From assembly GCA_965644315.1 (NCBI GenBank), contig CBFFRQ010000053.1, forward strand, positions 124,001 to 188,000: a stretch of 64,000 nt of DNA, in the 5' to 3' direction. Position numbers and translations under genes: made by a program. The stretch's first letter is position 1. Each line of letters opens with the position of its first letter. The notes under the pieces are model-generated. The model had not been told where the DNA came from. It saw only the letters and a program-made list of their open reading frames with translations, and ran no database searches. Source of the DNA: Caecitellus pseudoparvulus. Its lineage: Eukaryota > Protista > Bigyra: Bicosoecida. Below are positions 1,173 to 49,455 of this stretch, one piece after another.

Positions 1173-3762
1173 ATGGCTGACGAAGCCCCCACCATCTTCA
1201 CGCGCTACACGCGCATTGTGACTGTGGTTGTGCACCACTGCTCCGACCTGAAGAATGCAGCTCTGATGGGTACGTGTCGTGGTGCTATGCAGTGCGAGAG
1301 CTGCCGTGGCAGGCCTGCCTCGCTTTTGTGGTTGCCGTGCCCTTGGGCCCTTCGTCCTCTCGCGCCACTTCCGTGCATGTGAGCTATACCACGCGGCTTT
1401 GTGCAGGCACAAGTGACCCCTATGTCATGGTTGACTTCCCCGATGCCAAGGCTGTGCATGGCGGCAACACGTGCGTAGGAAGTGCATGTGATGGGCTGAC
1501 ACAGCACGTACTGGAGCGCAACCCTTCCACCCTCCTTTTCTGCAGCGATTCTGACGTCGACGGCCGCACTACTGTTGTGGACGACAACCTCAGCCCAAAG
1601 GTGACAATCTTGCGCCCGCCAGTCTTGCGTCTGCCGCTGCACCGAGCGATTCCCCACCCGCGGCCCCACAGTTCAACGAGCAATTCGTGTTCTTCGTGGA
1701 CTCCACTGCGACCAAGTTCCGCCTGCGCGCCTTCGACAAGTGTGTGGGCATGGATGCCAATCTGGGCTCTACCCAGGTGCTCCTGAACGAGGAGGAGGCG
1801 AACTTCGTCACTGCGCCGCTGGGTGGGCAGGGCACCATAACGTACTCCTTCACGCAAGTGAACGTGGCTGACCTGCGCGCTCTGGCCAGGATGGACGACC
1901 AGGCGGGAATGGCGGACCAGCTGGCGGTGGAGAAGGAGGCCCTGCAGGGGGAGGTTGCCACCCTTCAGGCGGAGGTTGCTGCCCTGCAGGGCACTGTGGC
2001 TTCCCTGGAGAGCGCCATGGCAGAGGATGGCGGCCTGGATGAGGCGCGCGAGGCTGCCTTGGCGGATGCCAAGGCAGAGGCCGAGGCCAACGCCGCCAAA
2101 GTGGCGGACCTGGAGGCCGCCGTCGCTGCCCTGAACGAGGAGGTGGAGGCTCTGACTGGGCAGCACGCTGCCGCTGCGGAGGCCGCCGAGGCCGCCACGG
2201 CACAGCTGGGTGTCCTGCAAGCCGCCCTCGGCGAGCAGGAGCAGAGCGAGGAGGCCGCTGCCGCTGCCGCCGAGGCTGCCGCTGCCCGGGCTTCGTCCAT
2301 GCAGGCTGAGCGAGATGCGTTTGAGAGCCAGGTCGCCAGTGCCATGGCAGCTGCTGAGGCTGCCGAGAGCCGTGCCGCGGAGGCCGAGGCACAAGTGGCC
2401 GAGTTGTCCGCTGCAAACGAGGAGCTGGCGGCGGCGGCAGATGGAGTGGGCGATGAGGAGCTGGTGGCCACCATCGCCGGCCTGCGTGGCGAGGTGGCTG
2501 CTCTGCAGCAGCGCCTGGGTGAGGAGTCTGCGGCGCCTGAGGTGGCCTGGGAGTCGGCGAGCGAGGTGCCCTTCACGCATGCGTCCACTGGCGGAGACTG
2601 GATGCTGGCTGTGGACGAGGCTGGCACCATCTACCGCAAGGCGTCTGGCGACATTGCAGGGGAGGAGACTGTCATCGAAGGCCGCGCGAGCTGCGTGTCC
2701 ACCAACGGCACGTGCGCGTGGGTGGTGAACTCTGAGGATGTCATCTACGCCTGCGCTGATGTCGGCGCAGAGCCTGATGGCATGGGGTGGTACAACGTCC
2801 CTGGCCGCCTGCGCCAGGTGCACGTGGGCGGCGACTACGTCGTGGGCACCAACCACGATGGCGTGTTCTACCTGCGCAAGACTGACGCAGAGCCAGACCA
2901 CCCGTGGGTGCCGCTCAACGGGCGGGGCGTGCAGATCGTCACCAACGGCGAGTTTGCGTGGCACATCAACGCCGCTGGCATGATTTACAAGGGCCCCATC
3001 GCTGGCGCTGAGGAGGCTCGGCGCATTGAGTGGGTGGAGGTGCCTGGCCGGCTCACCTCCCTGTCCATTGACTCCTCCCGCGTGTGGGGTACCAACGAGC
3101 ACGGCAACGTGTACTTCAAGGATGCCGCTGGCCTGTCACCCCACTGGACCCAGGTGGCCGAGGGCATGAAGCTGGTGGTCCCTCACCGCCACGGCATCGC
3201 CGCCATCTCCGCGGAGGGCACCTTCGTCACCCGCGCCTCTGTCGTGCCGCCTCCCCCCACCGACGCCGCCGTCCTGGCTGACGTGCCACAGGGCTACCTG
3301 CGCATGTTCATGCACATGGCCCACCGCACGTACAAGACGGGCGCCCTGCTGGCGGTCAAGTCTGCCGCCTACAACCTGGCCCTGCGCGTGGAGGACGAGG
3401 CTGGCGAGCGTGTGCGCGCCCACAACGGCGGCAAGCTGGGCCCACTCAAGCTCATCAACGTGCGCCCACACCCCAAGAACAGCCAGGCGGTGCTGCTGCA
3501 GTGCCGTGCACCTGGCAAGTCCTCCAAGAACTACCAGAGCGTGGGCGGTGGGGCTCTGCAGGCCACGGGCGGCACGGCTGCCGACACCCAGTTCGTACCC
3601 GAGTGGTCCCCCGTCAACCCCGGCAAGCTGACGCTGCACACCCCTCGTGGCTACGTGCGCTTTGCGTCTTCGGGCACCGTGGACGTGGATGGCATGCCTT
3701 CGGCACGCACGGAGGTGCACATTGTGCCTCACCCCCACCAAACCAAGCAGAACCTGTGGTGA
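1173..3762 (+). CDS. C2 domain - coiled coil - tectonin/beta-propeller repeat protein with a C-terminal beta-rich domain
   Basis: Three GT-AG introns (~1270-1407, ~1471-1545, ~1601-1671) join a C2 domain (VTVVVHHCSDLKNAALMG-TSDPYV...RTTVVDDNLSPK-FNEQFVF...FRLRAFDK). It is followed by an E/A-rich heptad coiled coil (~1890-2520) and tectonin-like repeats (W.VN....IY, W..VPGRL..V.VG, VWGTN..G.VY; ~2550-3230). Confidence 0.8.
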
Positions 3763-40984: not shown

Positions 40985-43900
40985 CTACGCCACCACCTCT
41001 GACAGGCCAGCTGCCAGCGGCTCAGCCGGCTGGCTGCCCGCCTTGCACAGCCCTGCAGCATATGTGGCCAGCTGAGGCACATGTTCTGCCGCGCTCAGGC
41101 GGGTGAGGGCGTCCCCCGCCGCTGTGCGCATGGCAGACACGGCAGCAGGGGGGGCCTCTGCCGAAGCAGCTGCCATGAGGCGAAGGGTGCCCGCGACAGG
41201 CAGCAGTGCGGCCTCTTCAGCCCCATCCGCCAGGGCGACGGGTACCGACGCAGCGAGGAAGGCCCCCAGCGCAGAACAGTACTGCACAACGTAGGGGGCT
41301 GTGGCCCTCAGTGGACGGGTGCCGCTGTCGCTGTCAGCAGGGGCGTGGAAGAGGGTTGTCCCGGCAGACACGGCAGGTGGGAGACCCTCCTCCGCCTGCA
41401 CGCCTGCTGCACCTGCTGCCTGCGCGAGGCTAGGCAGGACGCTGCTGAAGGCGCTCTGCCCAGCCAGGGAAGCAGCTGCCCCCAGCGCAGCGGCTGCAGA
41501 AGACCGGCTCATGCGGGCAGCTGGGTGCTGCGCAGCAGCCGCCGCCAGCAGCACTCGCACCAGGCAGGCGGACACCGCGGCAGCGGAGGTGGACGAGACA
41601 GCCGTGCTGGTCACCGCCGCCGTGCACAGGCGGTGTGCCAGGCGCAGGAGGTGGGACACAGCGTCGGCACAGGGCTGGCTGGTGAGAGCTGCGTCCTCGC
41701 CTGCCGCTGCCTGCACCAGCTCATCCCACGAGACGGACGGTGCAGAGAGCCAGGCGCTGACGGCTGAGGGCGTCGCAGCCCACGACGTGAGGTCGTGCAC
41801 CAGGCCCTCACTGGCCCCTCCGGCAGCTGCGATGTCAGCTGCCGTGCTGGCCAGGGTCAGGGCCATGTCGCTGGCAGCCTTGGCAAGGCTGGCTGCAGCC
41901 ACAGCACTCGCACCCTCCCCCGCGCCGGCAGCACCGGTGCCCAGGGAAATAGCTGGCAAGGCGTCTGTGATGAGCCAAGCTGACCACTCCCCCCACTGCT
42001 GGGGCAACGACCACGCCGAGCCAGCCGCGGAGGGGGCGGCCGTGTGCGCTGCGGCAGAGGCAGCAACAGAGAAGGCGAGGGCAGCTTGCAGGGCCTGTGC
42101 AGGGGGCAGTCCTTCACCCGTGGCGCCTGCCAGGGACAGCACCATGGTGGCAGCCGTGCCAAGACTCAGCACTGACTCGTCGTTGGCCAAGCGCAGCTCC
42201 AGCAATTGGTGGCGTGCGGCGCTGTGGCTGCCCTGCAGCACCCGGCGCAGCACCCACAGCGCTGTCATGGGATGCATGTCGCCGCTCTCCCCATCTGCGA
42301 GGGCAGAGTGGGCAGTGAGCAGGGCGCACCGCAACAGCTCGCCTTCTGCGTCGGCGTCACACAGGGCGTCCACCAGTGCTGGCAGGGCGGGCGGGCACCC
42401 TGCGCTGTGGGAAGGCATGTGCATGACATGCTGCACCAGCCAGGACGTGACCGGCGCCCGCTCAGCTGCAGGCAGCATGGACGCCAGGGCGGCGATTGCA
42501 CCGGTGATCTCGAAGGTGGCAGCTTCCTGGGGTGCGCCCGCTGCTGGCGCCCGTGCGGCCGACGAGAACCACTGCAGCCAGCGGCACAGCGTGTCAGCCG
42601 AGAAAGCCGCCTGCAGCTTGGTAGCCAGCGAGTCTTTGGGGGGTTCCATGGCGCCCCAGAGGGTCGCCGCTGCGCGCAGGCAGGCAGACATGAGCGCCGT
42701 GTTGGTGGCGTCCAGGGACGGCGCCGCGCCGCCCCCCTCAGCCACGACACCTGCGACGCCCTCTTCGTCGGACTCTGCGCAGTCAGCGGCAGCGTCGCGG
42801 GATCGCTTGCGCTTGGTGGGTGCCGCTTCAGCGGCTTTGATGGCCTTGTTCACGGCCTTGTGCAGGATGAGCAGCACCTTGCCCACGCTGCCGGCTGACG
42901 CGTGAGCGGGGGCGTTGCGGAAGAACGCCAGCGTGGCGGCAGGATGCGCATGCAGTGCCTTGAGGGTGCGCGTGGCCCACTCGGAGCCAGAGGCTGCCGG
43001 CGGCATGAAAGACGGCAGCAGCAGCGCAGTGAGAGGCCCTGCCACGGATGCCTCCTCAGCGTCTAGGGCCAGGCGTGCGAGGGCGTCCGGCACAGGCACG
43101 ACGTCCATGAAGGTGATACCCTTCAGCGCCTGCAGGGCCAGGAGCAGGCGGGCCATGGCCGCGCGCACCTTGACGCTGCGGTCATGCAGCAGGTGCCCCA
43201 GGAGGGGCAGCACCTGTGCCAGCGTCGCGTGGGCCAGGGGCTGCTCCAGCAAGAAGGCCATGCCATCCCCCACCGCTTCACGCACTGCGGAGCAGGCCGC
43301 ATCGCGGGAGCACTGCCCCACCAGCGTGCTCAGAAGGCCCTTGATGGCGGCGGCAGGGATGAGCTCCCAGTACAGGGACAGCACCCGGGCAGTGCCCTGC
43401 ACGCCCACCACCCTGACGTCCCCTGCCGGGTCCGTCAACAGCCCCGCCAGAGCGTCGAACTGCTGCTGCAGGATGGCCTCATACGCTGATGTGGGCCCAT
43501 CGGCATCGCCCAGGGGGAAGGTGTCCAGCCACAGCGTCGCGGCGTTGCGGCGCACGGCCGCGTTCGGGGCATCCAGCGCCCGCCACAGGATGGGAGCCCA
43601 GCACCGCGTGAGCATGGCGTCCACGCCCGCTGCTCGCTTGTGCTCCGCCAGGCCGCTGAGCATGCGGCGCACAGCTGCGAAGGTGCTGGGCACTGCCGCT
43701 GTCACGCCCTTGTGCATGAGGTCCTGGATGGCGGCCTGCTCCACCGCCAGGCGTGCGGCACCCTCAGCCTTGGCCCACCCTTTGAAGTACACGTTGGCCA
43801 GGCTGCGTAGGGAGCCCTTGGAGCTCTCGGGCAGCACAGACAGCACTGTCGCGTGGATGTCAGGCACCAGCTCTGCGTGCAGTCCCAGGGCGAACTCCAG

Positions 43901-44560
43901 GAAGCGCGCGTTCTCCTTGGTGCGCAAGAACAGCGGCGCGGCAAACGCCCGCAGGATGAGCTCCTTCACGCCGTCGGCTGACTCGTGCTCCAGGTCGAAG
44001 ACGTGGAAGGCGTCTTTCACGGAGAGCAGGCGCTTGATGTCTGCATCCTTTGCATCAGGTTGTGTCGCGTGCACGAGGAGGGCTGGCACCATCTGCACAG
44101 TGATGGCTTCTGCTTGAGGGCGCCCTTGGCACCAGTACCGGATGCACAGCTTCAGGATGCCGGAGCGCAACGCGTCCCCCGCGGGACCCTTGACGTAGAA
44201 CACTTGGTCGTGGAGGGAGCACACCACTCGCATCAAGCCGGGGCAGACCTTGGCCTGCTTGTCTGCCAAGGCACTGTGCGCCAGGGATGCGAGGCGGGAC
44301 ATCAAGTGGAAGGTGCTCTCGATTTCCGCACTGTCTGCATGGCCATGCTCGTAAGCGGCGATCGCGCCCAGGTACGCCTCCACGTCGCCACCAACGATGC
44401 CCTCCAGAATACCCGCAGCTGTGTTCCAGAAGGAAGAACCTTGTTTGCCCTGCAGGCAGTTCAGGATGGCTTCGTCGCTGCCGGCGTCCAGCAACGCCGT
44501 GAGAGACGTTGCGTCCGTTACGCCCACAACGGTGGCGCGGGTGACACCCGATGCCGCCAT
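40985..44560 (-). CDS. NCAPG2: condensin II HEAT subunit CAP-G2
   Basis: GVDAMLTRCWAPILWRALDAPNAAVRRNAATLWLDTFPL, LQQQFDAL..LL.DP...VR..GV.G...VLSLYWELIP, LLHDRSVKVRAA match CAP-G2 conserved blocks. Confidence 0.9.
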   Translation of the reverse strand: MAASGVTRATVVGVTDATSLTALLDAGSDEAILNCLQGKQGSSFWNTAAGILEGIVGGDVEAYLGAIAAYEHGHADSAEIESTFHLMSRLASLAHSALADKQAKVCPGLMRVVCSLHDQVFYVKGPAGDALRSGILKLCIRYWCQGRPQAEAITVQMVPALLVHATQPDAKDADIKRLLSVKDAFHVFDLEHESADGVKELILRAFAAPLFLRTKENARFLEFALGLHAELVPDIHATVLSVLPESSKGSLRSLANVYFKGWAKAEGAARLAVEQAAIQDLMHKGVTAAVPSTFAAVRRMLSGLAEHKRAAGVDAMLTRCWAPILWRALDAPNAAVRRNAATLWLDTFPLGDADGPTSAYEAILQQQFDALAGLLTDPAGDVRVVGVQGTARVLSLYWELIPAAAIKGLLSTLVGQCSRDAACSAVREAVGDGMAFLLEQPLAHATLAQVLPLLGHLLHDRSVKVRAAMARLLLALQALKGITFMDVVPVPDALARLALDAEEASVAGPLTALLLPSFMPPAASGSEWATRTLKALHAHPAATLAFFRNAPAHASAGSVGKVLLILHKAVNKAIKAAEAAPTKRKRSRDAAADCAESDEEGVAGVVAEGGGAAPSLDATNTALMSACLRAAATLWGAMEPPKDSLATKLQAAFSADTLCRWLQWFSSAARAPAAGAPQEAATFEITGAIAALASMLPAAERAPVTSWLVQHVMHMPSHSAGCPPALPALVDALCDADAEGELLRCALLTAHSALADGESGDMHPMTALWVLRRVLQGSHSAARHQLLELRLANDESVLSLGTAATMVLSLAGATGEGLPPAQALQAALAFSVAASAAAHTAAPSAAGSAWSLPQQWGEWSAWLITDALPAISLGTGAAGAGEGASAVAAASLAKAASDMALTLASTAADIAAAGGASEGLVHDLTSWAATPSAVSAWLSAPSVSWDELVQAAAGEDAALTSQPCADAVSHLLRLAHRLCTAAVTSTAVSSTSAAAVSACLVRVLLAAAAAQHPAARMSRSSAAAALGAAASLAGQSAFSSVLPSLAQAAGAAGVQAEEGLPPAVSAGTTLFHAPADSDSGTRPLRATAPYVVQYCSALGAFLAASVPVALADGAEEAALLPVAGTLRLMAAASAEAPPAAVSAMRTAAGDALTRLSAAEHVPQLATYAAGLCKAGSQPAEPLAAGLSEVVA

Positions 44561-44976
44561 GGTGCGAGCGGAGTGCTGCAGCTCCCACGTGAGAGTTTGG
44601 AGGACGAGTTCACATGCATTTGAGATGCATGTGAGGTATTTCCGTGCTTGTTTGGAATTTGCTCGGTGTGGACGTGTGTGCGAATGCCAGGAGGTTGTCT
44701 GCGACAGGCAGCAAGACCTGCTTCGCACCCCCACCCCGCCGGTTGACACTACAGTGGACCAGGCATTTCCCTGGGCCTGGCTGGACAGTTCAACAGTCAG
44801 TACGCACGTCCCTTCCATGCAAAGGCAGTGCGCCGTACGTGTTTGGAGGAGCTGGAGACTGGTTCTGGCTGTTTGTGCAGGGCACCTCACCAGATCAAGG
44901 CAGACCCCACTTGCACAGCCTGCTGCGCCCCTCGACGTTTACCGTCAAGCCAGTGAAGCCACACTGCACGTAGATC

Positions 44977-47900
44977 ATGACGCAACTCCTCTCCCGTGCA
45001 CTGGCGCCAACCGTAGTGCTGGCGCTGGCCGCGTGCGTCGCAGCGTCCAAGCAGACCTTGCGTGTCGGCATGCTGCTGCCTGGGACAGGGCCAGAGTGCG
45101 CCATTGGCCTGCAGTACTGGGCCATGGCCCAGACAGCAGTGCAAGGTATTGCATCTGAGCCATGGTGGCCCAGTGACCGTTTGGAGGTGGGTTGCCAGCT
45201 GCGATGCTTAGCGCCTGCGCTGCGGCGCACCTTCCCCGAACCTTCCTCTGCAGTTGGAGCCAGTGTGGCTGTCTGCGCAGCGCCCCTATGACGCGTGGCA
45301 CGCGGCCGAGGAGTTTGTGGACTCAGACCCGTGCACCCCTGAACAGTGCAGTGTCAGCCACGCCGCCCTTGTGCGTGCTGCGCGGGTGTGCGGCACAATT
45401 TCCGCACACGTCACCCTTGCCTCGTTGTCCTCGCTCGCGGCACAGGTTGGCCCTGCCACGACAGCATCCACTGAGCCAGTCCAGTACTTTGCACTCAAGA
45501 ACTCAGTGCCCCTTGTTGCGTTCCGGGCGACCGCCATCGACTTGACACGAGGCGTAGGCGGCGTGCCGGTGGAGGAGGGAGGGGTCTTTGACCCTTACTT
45601 CTCCCGCGTCTGCCCCACGGACGGCATGTTTGCCGCTGCCGTGTACAAGGGCATTGAGAAGTTCGGTTGGGATCAGTTTGCAGTGCTGGTGGAGGCATCG
45701 GAGTACGGCCGGCTGTTTCTGCAAGCCCTGCAGCAGGAGCACGAGGAGGCAGGGAACCCCCGCATCGTGACAGCGGAAGCCAGTTATGAGCCAGGCAGTG
45801 ACTCCTCTGTGGACGCAGCCCTGCGGGAAGTGCGTGCGACTGGCTCCCGCGTCATTGTACTCATTGCTGATGGCGCTGGCGCTGCCCACCTGCTGGACCG
45901 GGCCGCTGCCAGCGACATGACCGGCGTCGGCTGGACTTGGGTAGGCGCGGAGTGGGTGCAGGAGGGTACGTGGCTGCAGCCTATTTCAGCCGAACCTGGC
46001 AGCGTCGCTGCCCGGGAGGCTTCGGCCCGCGTCGCCAAGGCCATGGAGGGCGCCATTGGCGTCATGCCCGACACCGGTGCTCTGCATTCCTTCGCCGGGG
46101 GAAACTTCTCCACCCTGCGCCCAGCATTCCTGCAGCAGTACTTGGCACCAAATGGTGTCCCTGAGCCGCCAGGGCCTCCACACTTCCGCCCCCCCACTGC
46201 AGCCGGTTGCCCTGCCCTGCAGCAAGTGCCCTTCTCCGAGGGCGTGCGACCCGACGAGTACTTGCCGTACTTACACGATGCGCTGTGGCTCGTCGCCAAT
46301 GCCGCAGCGGATAAACTGCAGTGCACTAACAGCACCGCCGGCATGGGCGCCACGGGTTGCCTGGACGTGAACGTCACCTCCCGAGGGCTGGGCGAGTTGA
46401 TGCTGGGGGGTACAACCCGCACCTCACCCATCACAGGCAGCGCCATTTCCTTCTCACACCGCCACGACAGGTATGACGTGGGCCTGCACTTGGTGAATGT
46501 GCAAAGTGGGGGCATAGTCGTGCAGGCGGGCCAATGGCGTGTGCAGGGCCCAGAGACTGCGCAGGCCAGTGGGCAGTCCCTGACAGCTGGCAGGTGGGTG
46601 AGCTGGCGCCCACAAGACATTGTCTGGGCGGGGGGGCGCACCAACATCCCCTCGGATCGGGCAGTGCTGCCTGTGCACGTTGAGGCAGCTGTGTTCGTGG
46701 CAGTCATCGTGGGGGTCGTGCTGTCCATGGTGGGCGGTGCTGTGCTTGAGACATACCATGTCCATGTCTTGCCAGAGTCGGGTCTAACGGTGCTGTTGGG
46801 CATGTGCATGGGTGGCGCCTTGCTGGCGCTGGGGGAGCAGCACAGCCACCTGGCGCGATTTGACGAGACGGTGTTCTCGCTGGTCTTCCTGCCCATCATC
46901 ATCTTCGAGAGCGGCTTCGCACTGGACAAGCACCCGTTCTTCTCCCAGCTCGGCTCCATCCTCACCTTCGCGTGCGCTGGCACCCTCATCTCCGCCTTCA
47001 CCATTGGCGGCCTGCTGTTCTCAGCCAGTCAGAATGGCGTCATCCCCGGCCTCTCTTTCCCAGAGTGCATGTGCTTCGCCGCTCTCATCTCAGCGGTGGA
47101 CCCCGTCGCCATCCTGGCAACCTTCTCCTCCCTGCGAGTGGACCCCAGCCTTAACGCGCTGGTGTACGGCGAAGCGGTCATCAATGATGCCGTCGCAGTG
47201 GTGCTGTTCCGGGCATTCTCTGCCTTCATCGTGCTGGAAGCCACCCCTGCCCGCGTAGGCGAGGCGGCGGGCTCCTTCATTGGCATCCTGCTGGGCTCCG
47301 TCCTGCTGGGGGGCGCTGTTGGCCTGCTGGCCACTATCACCTTCCGGTACCGACCCCTGGTGGCGCAGCTAGCGAGCAAAGAACCCTCTCCTGCGGTGCA
47401 CGGAGTCGTGCAGGCGTCCCTGCTCTTGCTTTTCTCCTACCTCGCCTACGCTCTTGCGGAAGCGGCGGGCATCTCAGGCATTGTCGCTTCCCTCTTCGCC
47501 GGCATCGCCATGAATCACTACACGCAGAAGGCCCTGGATCGACGGGGGCGCGAGACCTCCAACCGCGCCTTCCGCATGCTGGCGTTCATCGCAGAGACAG
47601 TCGTCTTCTTCCAAGTCGGCATGAACGTCGTCTTGTACGTACGGGAGCTGCACTGGGCCCTCATCAGCATCACCCTCTGCCTGTGCCTGGTGGCGCGTGC
47701 ATTGAACGTGTTCCCCCTGGCTGCCCTCCTGAACTGCGGCCGCAAGGCCCCCATCCCCGGCAAGTACCAGCTTGTCATGTGGCATGCCGGGCTGCGCGGG
47801 GCCATCGCGTACGCGACCAGCATCGCCTTCCCCTCCCAGCACCGAGACATCATCATCTCCACCACCAGCGTGGTCATCCTCTTCACCATTTTCCTGCAAG

Positions 47901-48361
47901 GCGGCTCCATCACCCACCTCCTCGGCTGCATCGGCGTGCAAACAGGCGTTGATCCGGAGGAAGCTGCACAGATGCGCGCCTCTCGCCTGGCCATGACGCA
48001 CCAAGCGGAGCAGGAGAGCTGGGTCAAGGCGGGCCTGGCCCGCGCGGACAGAGCCCTGCGCGCCTGCCTGTACCACCCCAGTGTCCGGGAGGGGGACAGC
48101 CCCCTGCCCCTGGACAGTGCCTCCCAGCCACCAGCAGAAGCAGGTGCCGAGGAGGAAGCAGGTGGGGAGGCCGTGCCGCTCACAGGCGGCCCAGGTGCCC
48201 TGAGTGGCCAGGAGGGGGGCTTGGACATGGGCCCGCTGGATGGCGTGGGAGCAGGCGAGGTGGAGCTGGTGCCCATGGAAGGCGCCACAGCCAGTGAAGG
48301 CTCTGCTGCCAGCGAGGCGGGATCACAAGGCGACGATGACGCTGAACAAGTGCAGGTGTGA
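44977..48361 (+). CDS. Venus-flytrap (ANF-receptor/PBP1) ligand-binding domain fused to CPA1 Na+/H+ exchanger
   Basis: Signal peptide + LRVGMLLP. Introns 45187-45253 and probably 45371-45445. VFT motifs: AALVGP, YFSRVCPTD, FGWDQFAVL....EYG, SRVIVL, GWTWVG, YLHDALWL. NHE motifs: LPESGL, LVFLPIIIFESGF, FAALISAVDPVAIL, LVYGEAVINDAVAVVLF, GLRGAIAYA. Confidence 0.9.
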
Positions 48362-48384: not shown

Positions 48385-49455
48385 TCACGGCAGGGACAGG
48401 TTCAGGCGCCCACTCCGCCATGGCCCAGTATCACCTGCCACACCCTCCCGTAGCAGGCCCTGCGCACTTGACTGGCCCAGAATACCCTGAGCTGCGCTCT
48501 CAGCCATGTCAGATGCTCCTGAGCTTGCAGCCAGCAGCACCTGGATCGCGCTACGATACGCTTGTGGGTCGCTGCGAAGATGCGACACATGTGGCGAACT
48601 GCCGAAGCGCACCGCATGCAGGGGCACCCCCCGCTGCTCACGGCGGGCCATAAGACCCTCCAGCTCGCCAGCCCCTGTCAAAGTGTCTGCGCTGGAGTAC
48701 AGGAAGAGCTGGGGAGCCTGGGAGGGCAACTCTGCTGCGCCCGCCCAGTACTCGTCTTGCCACCCACCACCCATGCAAGAGAAGGCCAGGCTCAGGAGGC
48801 CAAGCAACAAGGCATTCGCAGCAGAACGTGTGCAGCCTGTGGGCATGCCCTCTGTGAGTGACCGCGCTGCCACCTCCACACTCAAGCGGCCGGGACAGCT
48901 GTCCAGGATCCAGCCTTGCACCTTCCCAAGCAGCTCCGCGGGCTGGGACCCGGGGTGAGGCGCAGCATGGATCCCAACCATCACCATGGGAATGAAGCCG
49001 CCATTAGAAAAGCAGTGCACCAGCAGCGGGCACTGCAAAGTCGCTGCAGTCTGCATGGGGAGTGTGGACCAGTGTGGCTTGCCGAATCGATTTCCGCACC
49101 TCGCAGCCCACAAACCTTGCTTGCAGCGGCCAGACCCGCCACTCCCAACTCATACAGTCGTTTCCAGTCCACGTAGATGTCCCTGTGCATATGGCAACGT
49201 TGAAGTGAGCACGGACGTGTGACAGCGCACCCAGCGCGCCCGCACGAACCATGTGGAAGGGGTCGTGCGAAGGCTGGCGATGCCAAGCTCCGCGTGCACT
49301 GCGGAATATTTGGCCAGGTACTTGTCCTCGCAGCCAGTCCACCCAAGCAACAACACCACTGCGCGCGCTGGCCCAGTGGAGGGTGTGTACTGAAACGTGA
49401 AGCCGCCTTCCTGCACCGCCCCAGGCGCAGTCTTGGCCCCTGGCGCGGCTGCCAT
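48385..49455 (-). CDS. TMEM53/DUF829-family alpha/beta-hydrolase-fold protein
   Basis: VVLLLGWTGCEDKYLAKYS, LLVHCFSNGG, ILDSCPG, PQLFLYSSAD, FGSSPHVSHLR.DP..Y; two introns. Confidence 0.85.

What the first reader, a model, noticed from the sequence alone, without database searches (positions are those of the whole stretch)
44977..48361. Candidate ligand-gated Na+/H+ exchanger: Venus-flytrap receptor ectodomain fused to an intact NHE/NHX transporter
Seen: one continuous reading frame (45254-48361) plus a signal-peptide exon joined by a clean 67-nt GT-AG intron. About 500 aa carry type-I periplasmic-binding/ANF-receptor motifs (LRVGMLLP, AALVGP, PYFSRVCPTD, FGWDQFAVL..EYG, ARVIVL-like SRVIVL, YLHDALWL, W.GG...PSDR). 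With no intron or stop between them, they run into a full CPA1 domain with its ion-binding motifs intact (FLPIIIFESG, SAVDPV, GEAVINDAV, GLRG). Established: this flytrap fold is the ligand sensor of class C GPCRs (mGluR/GABA-B), iGluR amino-terminal domains and natriuretic-peptide receptor cyclases; these and NHEs both work as dimers; canonical NHEs are regulated by cytosolic tails, not ectodomains. Inference: an extracellular or luminal ligand (amino acid, peptide or ion) could directly gate pH/Na+ exchange, i.e. a receptor-antiporter. I do not know of a characterised example.
Basis: partly seen in the sequence, partly recalled or inferred. Interest (0 to 1): 0.92.

Follow-up and report, generated by a model that had tools for sequence, protein, structure and literature searches.

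The report
Flytrap receptor domain fused to Na+/H+ exchanger
A marine protist gene joins an outward-facing Venus-flytrap sensor domain (as in glutamate and calcium receptors) to a complete Na+/H+ exchanger; the fusion recurs in dozens of protist sequence clusters, I found no paper describing it, and it may be a transporter controlled directly by an outside chemical.

Summary
Window 45254-48361 (+) is one 1035-codon open frame with Pfam ANF_receptor (E 1.7e-27) followed by Na_H_Exchanger (E 2.4e-57). Exon 1 (44977-45186: signal peptide and first strand) is joined by a 67-nt GT..AG intron. That intron is skipped in a seawater metatranscriptome contig and sits at the same position in a 56%-identical syntenic ortholog.

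One correction: a second, in-frame 75-nt intron (45371-45445) is probable. Its 25 residues are absent from all 23 aligned homologs and model at pLDDT <50.

The ectodomain model matches mGluR, CaSR, GluN1, GLR3.4 and LivK flytraps (Z 27-29). The five mGluR1 alpha-amino-acid-binding positions read T, T, D, Y, E. The exchanger is NHE8-like, with 13 helices and every ion-site residue invariant. A 22-residue linker without indels (invariant P-x-D-R) joins flytrap to TM1.

About 40 sequence clusters carry the same fusion, in the same order, including two transcriptome-derived proteins. Named sources are Cafeteria and Platysulcus. Seven literature searches found no description.

Best reading (about 0.5): a sensor-regulated exchanger. 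Ligand gating and ligand identity are inferred, not shown.

The parts
44977..45186 (+). Exon 1: start codon, signal-peptide-like hydrophobic N-terminus, first beta strand of the flytrap (LRVGMLLP), conserved Cys41
   Evidence: frame, 70 codons. (hydropathy peak at aa 12-23). (aligns to N-termini of 9 homologs; G31 and C41 invariant). (RNA contigs cover it).
45187..45253 (+). Intron 1, 67 nt, GTGGGT..CTCTGCAG
   Evidence: an X1 contig joins 45184/45252 with GT..AG ends (cut +2); ortholog L016 has an intron at the identical codon boundary (2954-3054).
45254..45370 (+). Exon 2: continues flytrap lobe 1 (conserved AW..F...PC....C segment)
45371..45445 (+). Probable intron 2, 75 nt, in frame, GTGCGT..pyrimidine-rich..CACAG; if retained it adds 25 residues (ORF aa 40-64)
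   Evidence: only this GT/AG pair restores AALVGP. (gap in all 23 aligned homologs). (pLDDT <50 at aa 43-68). (absent in the ortholog's genomic DNA). Not covered by RNA contigs.
45446..46618 (+). Rest of the Venus-flytrap (type I periplasmic-binding-protein / ANF_receptor) ectodomain; pocket positions T70, T93, D123, Y151, E233 (ORF numbering); three N-x-S/T sequons
46619..46684 (+). Juxtamembrane linker, ORF aa 456-477 (IVW.GG....P-S-D-R...), no indels in 21 homologs; P466, D468, R469 (46649-46660) invariant
   Evidence: 'WPGG..P' aligns to the GluN1 and GLR3.4 ATD ends.
46685..47932 (+). 13-helix NHE8-like CPA1 exchanger domain (aa 478-893); D616 in SAVDPV (47099-47101), E640, N644-D645 (47183-47188), R815, R848
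47933..48361 (+). Cytosolic C-terminal tail (helical to about aa 948, then acidic and disordered) and stop codon 48359-48361

Best explanation
Shown: one gene (44977-48361, + strand; two RNA- or homology-supported exons and probably a third) encodes a protein of about 1,080 residues. Its order is cleavable-looking signal peptide, Venus-flytrap (VFT) ectodomain, 22-residue linker of fixed length, 13-helix NHE8-like Na+(K+)/H+ exchanger, cytosolic tail. It belongs to a family of at least about 40 sequence clusters, all with the same domain order, found in marine protists; I found no paper describing it. Inferred: the VFT faces the outside or the lumen of an endomembrane compartment, because NHE TM1 starts on that side. 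NHE folds work as homodimers, so two flytraps should sit side by side above the dimerisation domain, to which TM1 belongs. Binding of a small ligand in the cleft would then close or re-orient the flytraps, and the rigid P-x-D-R linker would pass this to TM1 and the dimer interface. That would raise or lower elevator-type exchange, so a chemical cue becomes a pH/Na+ change without a second messenger. The most likely ligand class is an alpha-amino acid or similar, because the window keeps T/T/D/Y/E at the five mGluR1 backbone-binding positions. My odds: architecture real 0.97; exchanger active 0.85; VFT extracytoplasmic 0.9; VFT is a ligand-dependent regulator of exchange about 0.5; ligand is amino-acid-like about 0.3.
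For: Single frame with both Pfam domains. Intron 1 spliced in RNA, and a contig crosses the domain junction. Full-length homologs come from transcriptomes: P0004 (TSA) and P0017 (Platysulcus, EukProt). There are 21 fusion proteins, and 19 more fusion clusters among 50%-identity representatives, always VFT then NHE within 3-5 residues. A syntenic ortholog has the same exon-1/intron-1 structure. VFT fold: profile against PDB gives GLR3.4 at 1.7e-38 and mGluR6/4/8, GluN1 and CaSR at about 1e-30; the model has pLDDT 78.8 and pTM 0.83; Foldseek gives E about 1e-19; VIA gives Z 27-29 over 300-370 residues. The pocket positions corresponding to mGluR1 S165, T188, D208, Y236 and D318 (definition in PMC2680970) read T, T, D, Y, E in the window. 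About 10 of 24 members keep this pattern. The exchanger matches NHE9 at E 8.7e-67 with identical D, E, N-D and R residues, and these are invariant in 21 members. The model shows 13 helices with TM5 and TM12 broken at SAVDP and GLRG. The linker has no indel from I456 to TM1, and P466, D468 and R469 are invariant in 24 sequences. The nearest non-fused VFT relatives carry 7tm_3, kinase or other effector modules, so this VFT type is used as a sensor elsewhere. SLC9C1 shows that an NHE can be gated by fused sensor domains (PMC6052114).
Against: No ligand, binding or transport was measured. The best sequence matches include the iGluR amino-terminal domains (GluN1, GLR3.4), which serve assembly and allosteric modulation rather than agonist binding. 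The pocket signature is kept in only about 10 of 24 members, and the invariant ectodomain residues (R118, R199, G226, W227, G266) look structural rather than ligand-contacting. The homodimer test of the ectodomain gave no verdict. The relative orientation of the domains in the monomer model is not informative. The subcellular location is unknown; animal NHE8 is largely Golgi or endosomal (from my own knowledge).
Confidence: 0.5

Rival explanations
1. The flytrap is an iGluR-ATD-like structural module. It drives folding, dimer assembly, sorting or slow allosteric tuning of an otherwise constitutive NHE8-type exchanger, with no acute ligand gating.
For: The top profile hits are ATDs of AtGLR3.4 and GluN1, and the 'WPGG..P' end motif aligns to the ATD-LBD linker of GluN1. 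Invariant ectodomain residues are structural, and pocket positions vary among members.
Against: The window and about 10 members keep all five amino-acid backbone-binding positions. Full-length VFT alignments to ligand-binding mGluRs and CaSR are as good as those to ATDs. The strict linker conservation suggests force transmission rather than a tether.
Confidence: 0.3
2. Transceptor reading: the exchanger half mainly serves as a membrane anchor or signalling platform through its cytosolic tail for a flytrap receptor, and ion transport is secondary or lost.
For: VFT relatives are fused to many different effectors. The tail carries conserved helices at aa 901-948.
Against: All ion-binding and transport residues (D616, E640, N644, D645, R815, R848) are invariant in 21 divergent members, and the TM3-TM13 core is the best-conserved part of the protein.
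Confidence: 0.08
3. Substrate-capture reading: the flytrap acts like the substrate-binding domains fused to some bacterial ABC transporters, binding a cation or co-substrate and handing it to the exchanger.
For: The fold equals bacterial LivJ/LivK-type substrate-binding proteins. JGI auto-annotation names some members 'ABC-type branched-chain amino acid transport substrate-binding protein'.
Against: NHE substrates (Na+, K+, H+) are abundant in sea water and need no capture protein. No CPA transporter is known to use one (my own knowledge). The closest sequence relatives are eukaryotic receptor VFTs, not bacterial SBPs.
Confidence: 0.05
4. Artefact: two neighbouring genes are read as one because of an assembly or annotation error.
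For: None beyond the general risk. Near-identical database entries are fragments (P0121, P0122).
Against: There is an uninterrupted frame, and the same junction occurs in about 40 independent clusters, including transcriptome-derived proteins. An RNA-library contig crosses the junction. There is a syntenic ortholog.
Confidence: 0.02

Closest known systems
Class C GPCRs (mGluR, CaSR, GABA-B, T1R)
   Same: N-terminal signal peptide plus a type I PBP Venus-flytrap ectodomain (Z 27-29). The five alpha-amino-acid backbone-binding positions are chemically conserved. The effector is expected to be dimeric.
   Different: There is no cysteine-rich domain and no 7tm_3 domain. The effector is a 13-helix secondary transporter, so no G protein is involved. 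The flytrap joins TM1 through a 22-residue P-x-D-R linker.
Ionotropic glutamate receptor amino-terminal domains (GluN1; plant GLR3.4)
   Same: These are the best profile-to-PDB sequence matches (1.7e-38 and about 3e-31). They share the 'I(I/V)WPGG....P' motif at the end of the domain.
   Different: No S1S2 ligand-binding domain or Lig_chan pore follows; a transporter follows directly. iGluR ATDs are modulatory rather than the agonist site.
SLC9A8 / NHE8 and the organellar NHE6/7/9 exchangers
   Same: The transporter half is about 40% identical to animal NHE8 and matches NHE9 at E 8.7e-67, with identical ion-site residues. It has 13 helices. Animal NHE8 nests among the fused proteins in the domain tree.
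   Different: Canonical NHE8/6/9 have only a short N-terminal segment before TM1. Here about 520 residues of receptor ectodomain take that place.
SLC9C1 (sperm NHE) and plant SOS1/NHX7
   Same: These are NHE cores fused to dedicated sensor or regulatory domains that gate exchange (PMC6052114). Both appear among the PDB hits.
   Different: Their sensors (voltage-sensor domain, cyclic-nucleotide-binding domain, autoinhibitory tail) are C-terminal and membrane-embedded or cytosolic. Here the sensor is N-terminal and extracytoplasmic.
Venus kinase receptors, natriuretic-peptide receptor cyclases
   Same: A VFT ectodomain is fused to a non-GPCR effector. VKRs are activated by amino acids (PMC2680970). 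Protist relatives of this VFT also carry kinase domains.
   Different: Those use a single-pass membrane anchor and an enzymatic effector. Here the effector is a polytopic transporter.

Membership tests
ANF_receptor / type I periplasmic-binding-protein Venus flytrap (PF01094) | Profile match above the curated cut-off | tested here: met
   96.8 bits against a cut-off of 25.4, aa 48-417. The family profile against PDB gives GLR3.4 at 1.7e-38 and mGluR, GluN1 and CaSR at about 1e-30.
ANF_receptor / type I periplasmic-binding-protein Venus flytrap (PF01094) | Two alpha/beta lobes joined by a hinge (bilobate fold) | tested here: met
   Model pLDDT 78.8, pTM 0.83. Foldseek E about 1e-19 to CaSR and mGluR. 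VIA Z 27-29, 300-370 aligned residues, to mGluR, CaSR, GluN1, GLR3.4 and LivK.
ANF_receptor / type I periplasmic-binding-protein Venus flytrap (PF01094) | Extracytoplasmic location (signal peptide; N-out junction to the membrane) | tested here: met
   Exon 1 has a hydrophobic N-terminus, as do 9 homologs. An odd number (13) of TM helices follows. There are 7 Cys and 3 N-x-S/T sequons. No dedicated signal-peptide predictor was available.
ANF_receptor / type I periplasmic-binding-protein Venus flytrap (PF01094) | Cleft residues able to bind an alpha-amino acid (mGluR1 S165, T188, D208, Y236, D318) | tested here: inconclusive
   The window has T70, T93, D123, Y151 and E233 at the aligned positions. 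About 10 of 24 members keep the pattern. The GLR3.4 ATD keeps most of them too, so the pattern does not prove binding.
ANF_receptor / type I periplasmic-binding-protein Venus flytrap (PF01094) | Actual ligand binding and lobe closure | not testable with these tools
   Needs purified ectodomain with thermal shift, ITC or a structure.
CPA1 Na+/H+ exchanger (PF00999), NHE8-like | Profile match above the curated cut-off | tested here: met
   194.9 bits against a cut-off of 26.2, profile positions 5-373 of 375. NHE9 8.7e-67, NHE6 2e-62, NHE1 5e-53.
CPA1 Na+/H+ exchanger (PF00999), NHE8-like | Ion-binding and transport residues (TM5 Asp, Glu, N-D motif, two Arg) | tested here: met
   D616, E640, N644, D645, R815 and R848 are identical to NHE9 in the alignment and invariant in 21 family members.
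CPA1 Na+/H+ exchanger (PF00999), NHE8-like | 13-helix NhaA-type fold with two broken, crossing helices | tested here: met
   The full-length model has 13 helices between aa 478 and 893, with TM5 broken at 613-616 and TM12 at 846-850. Hydropathy agrees.
CPA1 Na+/H+ exchanger (PF00999), NHE8-like | Homodimer; measurable electroneutral exchange | not testable with these tools
   A full-length dimer exceeds the size limit of complex prediction. The ectodomain-only job gave no verdict.
Class C GPCR | 7tm_3 heptahelical domain (and usually a cysteine-rich domain) after the flytrap | tested here: not met
   Pfam finds no 7tm_3. The membrane part is an NHE.
Ionotropic glutamate receptor | S1S2 ligand-binding domain and Lig_chan pore after the ATD | tested here: not met
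   No such Pfam matches.
SLC9C (sensor-gated NHE) | Voltage-sensor and cyclic-nucleotide-binding domains C-terminal to the exchanger | tested here: not met
   The tail of 142 residues has no Pfam match and is mostly disordered in the model.

The most novel reading that the evidence does not exclude
A directly ligand-gated solute carrier. Binding of an extracellular or luminal small molecule (amino-acid-like) to a dimeric Venus flytrap switches a Na+(K+)/H+ exchanger on or off through a rigid P-x-D-R linker to TM1. The cell would then convert a chemical cue into a pH/Na+ signal with no G protein, channel or second messenger. This would be a third output class for flytrap receptors, beside GPCRs/channels and enzymes. 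In phagotrophic flagellates it might couple nutrient sensing to the pH of the food vacuole or the cell surface.
Probability: 0.35. Interest if true: 0.88.

Novelty: new variant of a known kind. Interest (0 to 1): 0.72.

Why it matters
Solute carriers are generally thought to be paced by their substrates and by cytosolic regulators. SLC9C1 was notable as a carrier gated like a channel. A family of exchangers with a receptor-type ectodomain would extend that idea to extracellular chemical gating. It would also give flytrap receptors a new effector class. The family is compact, has few introns and comes from culturable bacterivores such as Cafeteria, so the hypothesis can be tested directly by expression, ectodomain deletion and ligand screening. 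It also marks an unannotated family in marine protist metagenomes, where members are currently labelled 'NhaP-type antiporter', 'sodium/hydrogen exchanger 8' or 'ABC-type substrate-binding protein' according to which half the annotator saw.

Tried and rejected
1. Alternative donor GT at 45146 for intron 1: out of frame. RNA supports 45187.

2. Other GT/AG pairs around 45340-45470: only 45371-45445 restores the conserved 'VGP' motif and matches the homologs.

4. The database fragments P0121 and P0122 do not reach that region.

5. Complex prediction on two copies of the ectodomain: no verdict, score 0.00. This is neither support nor evidence against dimerisation.

6. ESM Atlas look-alike search: no usable hit.

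7. Single-origin question: the NHE-domain tree (quick method, with long branches and an unreliable own-genome outgroup) needs at least 3 label changes and places animal NHE8 among the fused proteins. I do not draw a conclusion on one origin versus several, or on gain versus loss.

8. Taxon of TSA GECG01006072: no paper found.

9. Literature: seven searches that ran and look-ups in two candidate papers found no description of the fusion. The one paper that holds both Pfam numbers lists them separately for C. elegans. Two further searches failed on syntax.

10. Operon-like context: rejected as irrelevant. This is a eukaryotic locus and the neighbours are unrelated (condensin II subunit, DUF829).

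The models therefore lack exon 1 and carry the 25 probably intronic residues.

Full report
**Observation**

The window is GC-rich (62-70% around the locus) and eukaryotic. The ORF listing returns a 1035-codon frame at 45254..48361 on the + strand. Pfam places ANF_receptor (PF01094, aa 48-417, E 1.7e-27, 96.8 bits) and Na_H_Exchanger (PF00999, aa 492-890, E 2.4e-57, 194.9 bits) on it, both far above their curated cut-offs, plus a sub-threshold Peripla_BP_6 match.

**Gene model**

Upstream, ATG 44977 opens a 70-codon exon ending at 45186. GT at 45187 and AG at 45252-45253 delimit a 67-nt intron that keeps the frame. Three lines of evidence support it.
- A 217-nt contig of the seawater metatranscriptome run X1 joins 45184 to 45252 with GT..AG ends.
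- The exon aligns to the N-termini of nine homologs: hydrophobic leader, then the 'VRVGLLLP' strand, with G31 and C41 invariant.
- A 56%-identical ortholog on a 190-kb metagenome contig (L016) has the same exon, an intron at the identical codon boundary (2954-3054, GTAAGT..CACAG), and the same upstream neighbour, a condensin-II subunit on the opposite strand.

A second X1 contig (46543-47069) runs unbroken over the domain junction.

The frame is probably not one exon. The 75 nt at 45371-45445 (GTGCGT...pyrimidine-rich tract...CACAG) encode 25 residues that are a gap in all 23 aligned homologs. They are absent from the ortholog's genomic DNA and model at pLDDT <50 (aa 43-68). Both RNA-verified introns near here also begin with GTG. 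No RNA contig covers the spot, so I put this intron at about 0.75.

**Ectodomain**

- The single sequence hits GluN1 ATDs and mGluR flytraps only weakly (E about 1e-6).
- A 24-member family profile hits AtGLR3.4 (1.7e-38), mGluR6/4/8/7, the GluN1 ATD and CaSR (about 1e-30), over the full flytrap for the mGluRs.
- The AlphaFold model (pLDDT 78.8, pTM 0.83) matches CaSR and mGluR by Foldseek (E about 1e-19).
- By VIA-align it matches mGluR, CaSR, GluN1, GLR3.4, T1R and bacterial LivK/LivJ at Z 27-29 with 300-370 aligned residues. These rows are tied, so no single subfamily is singled out.
- In the HMMER alignment to mGluR6, with the mGluR1 motif as defined in PMC2680970, the five positions that hold the alpha-amino and alpha-carboxyl groups read T70, T93, D123, Y151 and E233 in the window. 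About 10 of 24 members keep (S/T)-T-D-(Y/F)-(D/E); the others vary.
- The ectodomain has 7 Cys and 3 N-x-S/T sequons.

**Linker**

From I456 to the start of TM1 (A478) there is no indel in 21 sequences. P466, D468 and R469 are invariant in 24 sequences, and W458 nearly so. The 'IVWPGG....P' part aligns to 'IIWPGGETEKP' of GluN1 and the equivalent stretch of GLR3.4.

**Exchanger**

- phmmer gives NHE9 8.7e-67, NHE6 2e-62, NHE1 5e-53, NHE3, then SLC9C1 and SOS1.
- The alignment shows SAVDPV/SATDPV, GEAVINDAV/GESVLNDAV, ARALNVFPL/ARACNIYPL and GLRGAIA/GLRGAIA.
- D616, P617, E640, N644, D645, R815 and R848 are invariant across the family.
- The full-length model (pLDDT 71, pTM 0.69) has 13 helices between aa 478 and 893, with TM5 and TM12 broken at the expected motifs, then tail helices and a disordered acidic end. 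Hydropathy agrees.
- Thirteen helices with TM1 aligned to NHE1 TM1 put the N-terminus outside. That side is where NHE1 carries its N-glycan (my own knowledge), so it fits a signal peptide plus ectodomain.
- The nearest full-length unfused proteins are animal NHE8 (about 40% identity). In a quick tree, animal NHE8 nests among the fused proteins. I take this only as 'NHE8-like'.

**Family**

- One search lists 21 proteins with both Pfam domains.
- An exhaustive phmmer of the ectodomain against 1.84 billion representatives gave only 188 hits. Local profiles built from alignment A1 identify 19 further fusion clusters among them, always flytrap first and NHE starting 3-5 residues after the ectodomain profile ends.
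- Named members are four Cafeteria strains, Platysulcus tardus (EukProt), an unnamed TSA transcript and an unnamed EukProt model. There are also fragments about 99% identical to the window, filed as 'Slc9a8, partial [Symbiodinium sp. KB8]'. All others are metagenomic, with one-sided automatic names.
- Two members are transcriptome-derived, so the fusion mRNA exists in relatives.
- The window's own genome (30.6 Mb) has about nine NHE loci and only one other ANF_receptor gene. Only this gene is fused.
- Earlier notes of this scan call the organism a marine, apparently non-photosynthetic stramenopile. That fits the named homologs, but I did not test it.
- The closest unfused VFT relatives carry 7tm_3, protein-kinase, PARP/WWE or tandem-VFT architectures.

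**Mechanism**

Shown: the architecture, the topology logic, intact transport residues, a flytrap with a plausible amino-acid pocket, a rigid conserved linker, and expression.

Inferred: the flytrap senses a small molecule outside the cell or in a lumen, and modulates exchange through TM1 and the dimerisation domain.

Rivals: an ATD-like assembly or modulatory role (0.3), a transceptor (0.08), substrate capture (0.05) and an artefact (0.02). The homodimer test gave no verdict.

**Novelty**

Seven literature searches that ran and look-ups in two candidate papers found no description. The sequences are public but uncharacterised. SLC9C1 (PMC6052114) is the nearest precedent for a sensor-gated NHE, and VKRs (PMC2680970) for a flytrap on an unusual effector. 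I rate this a new variant of known kinds, with interest 0.72.

Noticed in passing
window 47987-48131, minus strand: A contig of RNA run X5 skips 145 nt with CT..AC ends on the + strand. That is a GT..AG intron on the minus strand (GTGGCT...CCAG), antisense to the exchanger's C-tail coding region. It is probably part of the transcript or 3' UTR of the minus-strand DUF829 gene just downstream.
   Followed up: partly
window 40988-44890, minus strand; L016 1-2504: The divergent upstream neighbour is a 1301-aa condensin-II non-SMC subunit (PF12422, E 2.6e-38). The same neighbour, in the same orientation, flanks the 56%-identical ortholog, so the locus is syntenic between two protists.
   Followed up: partly
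window 48388-49113, minus strand: The convergent downstream gene encodes a DUF829 protein (PF05705, E 1.3e-26). Its stop lies only about 25 nt from the exchanger's stop codon.
   Followed up: no
G000:C61:38098-43278 (L002, L003): The only other ANF_receptor gene of this genome lies in a 3976-aa open frame with at least two flytrap matches. It may be a giant multi-flytrap protein like the tandem-VFT hits P0136, P0138 and P0168.
   Followed up: no
proteins P0121, P0122 (NCBI CAE7874793.1, CAE7911472.1): Fragments about 99% identical to the window's protein are deposited as 'Slc9a8, partial [Symbiodinium sp. KB8]'. The window's high GC content, its GT-AG introns and its stramenopile homologs suggest this protist contaminates that dinoflagellate assembly.
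   Followed up: partly
alignment A1 columns about 1490-1620 (P0018-P0021): One subgroup of the fusion family carries an extra insert of about 100 residues between TM11 and TM12 of the exchanger. Its nature is unknown.
   Followed up: no
G000:C41:227690-231905 (L008, L013); C28 (L009, L011); C57 (L014): Other NHE loci of the same genome sit in very long open frames (2252, 1272 and 1060 aa). They may be further NHE fusions (SOS1- or SLC9C-like, or new).
   Followed up: no
window 45703/46799 in run X12: A poly(A) metatranscriptome contig touches 45684-45703 and 46799-46816, with 20 unrelated letters between them and unrelated flanks. It is most likely a chimeric or unrelated contig, not a splice.
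   Followed up: no
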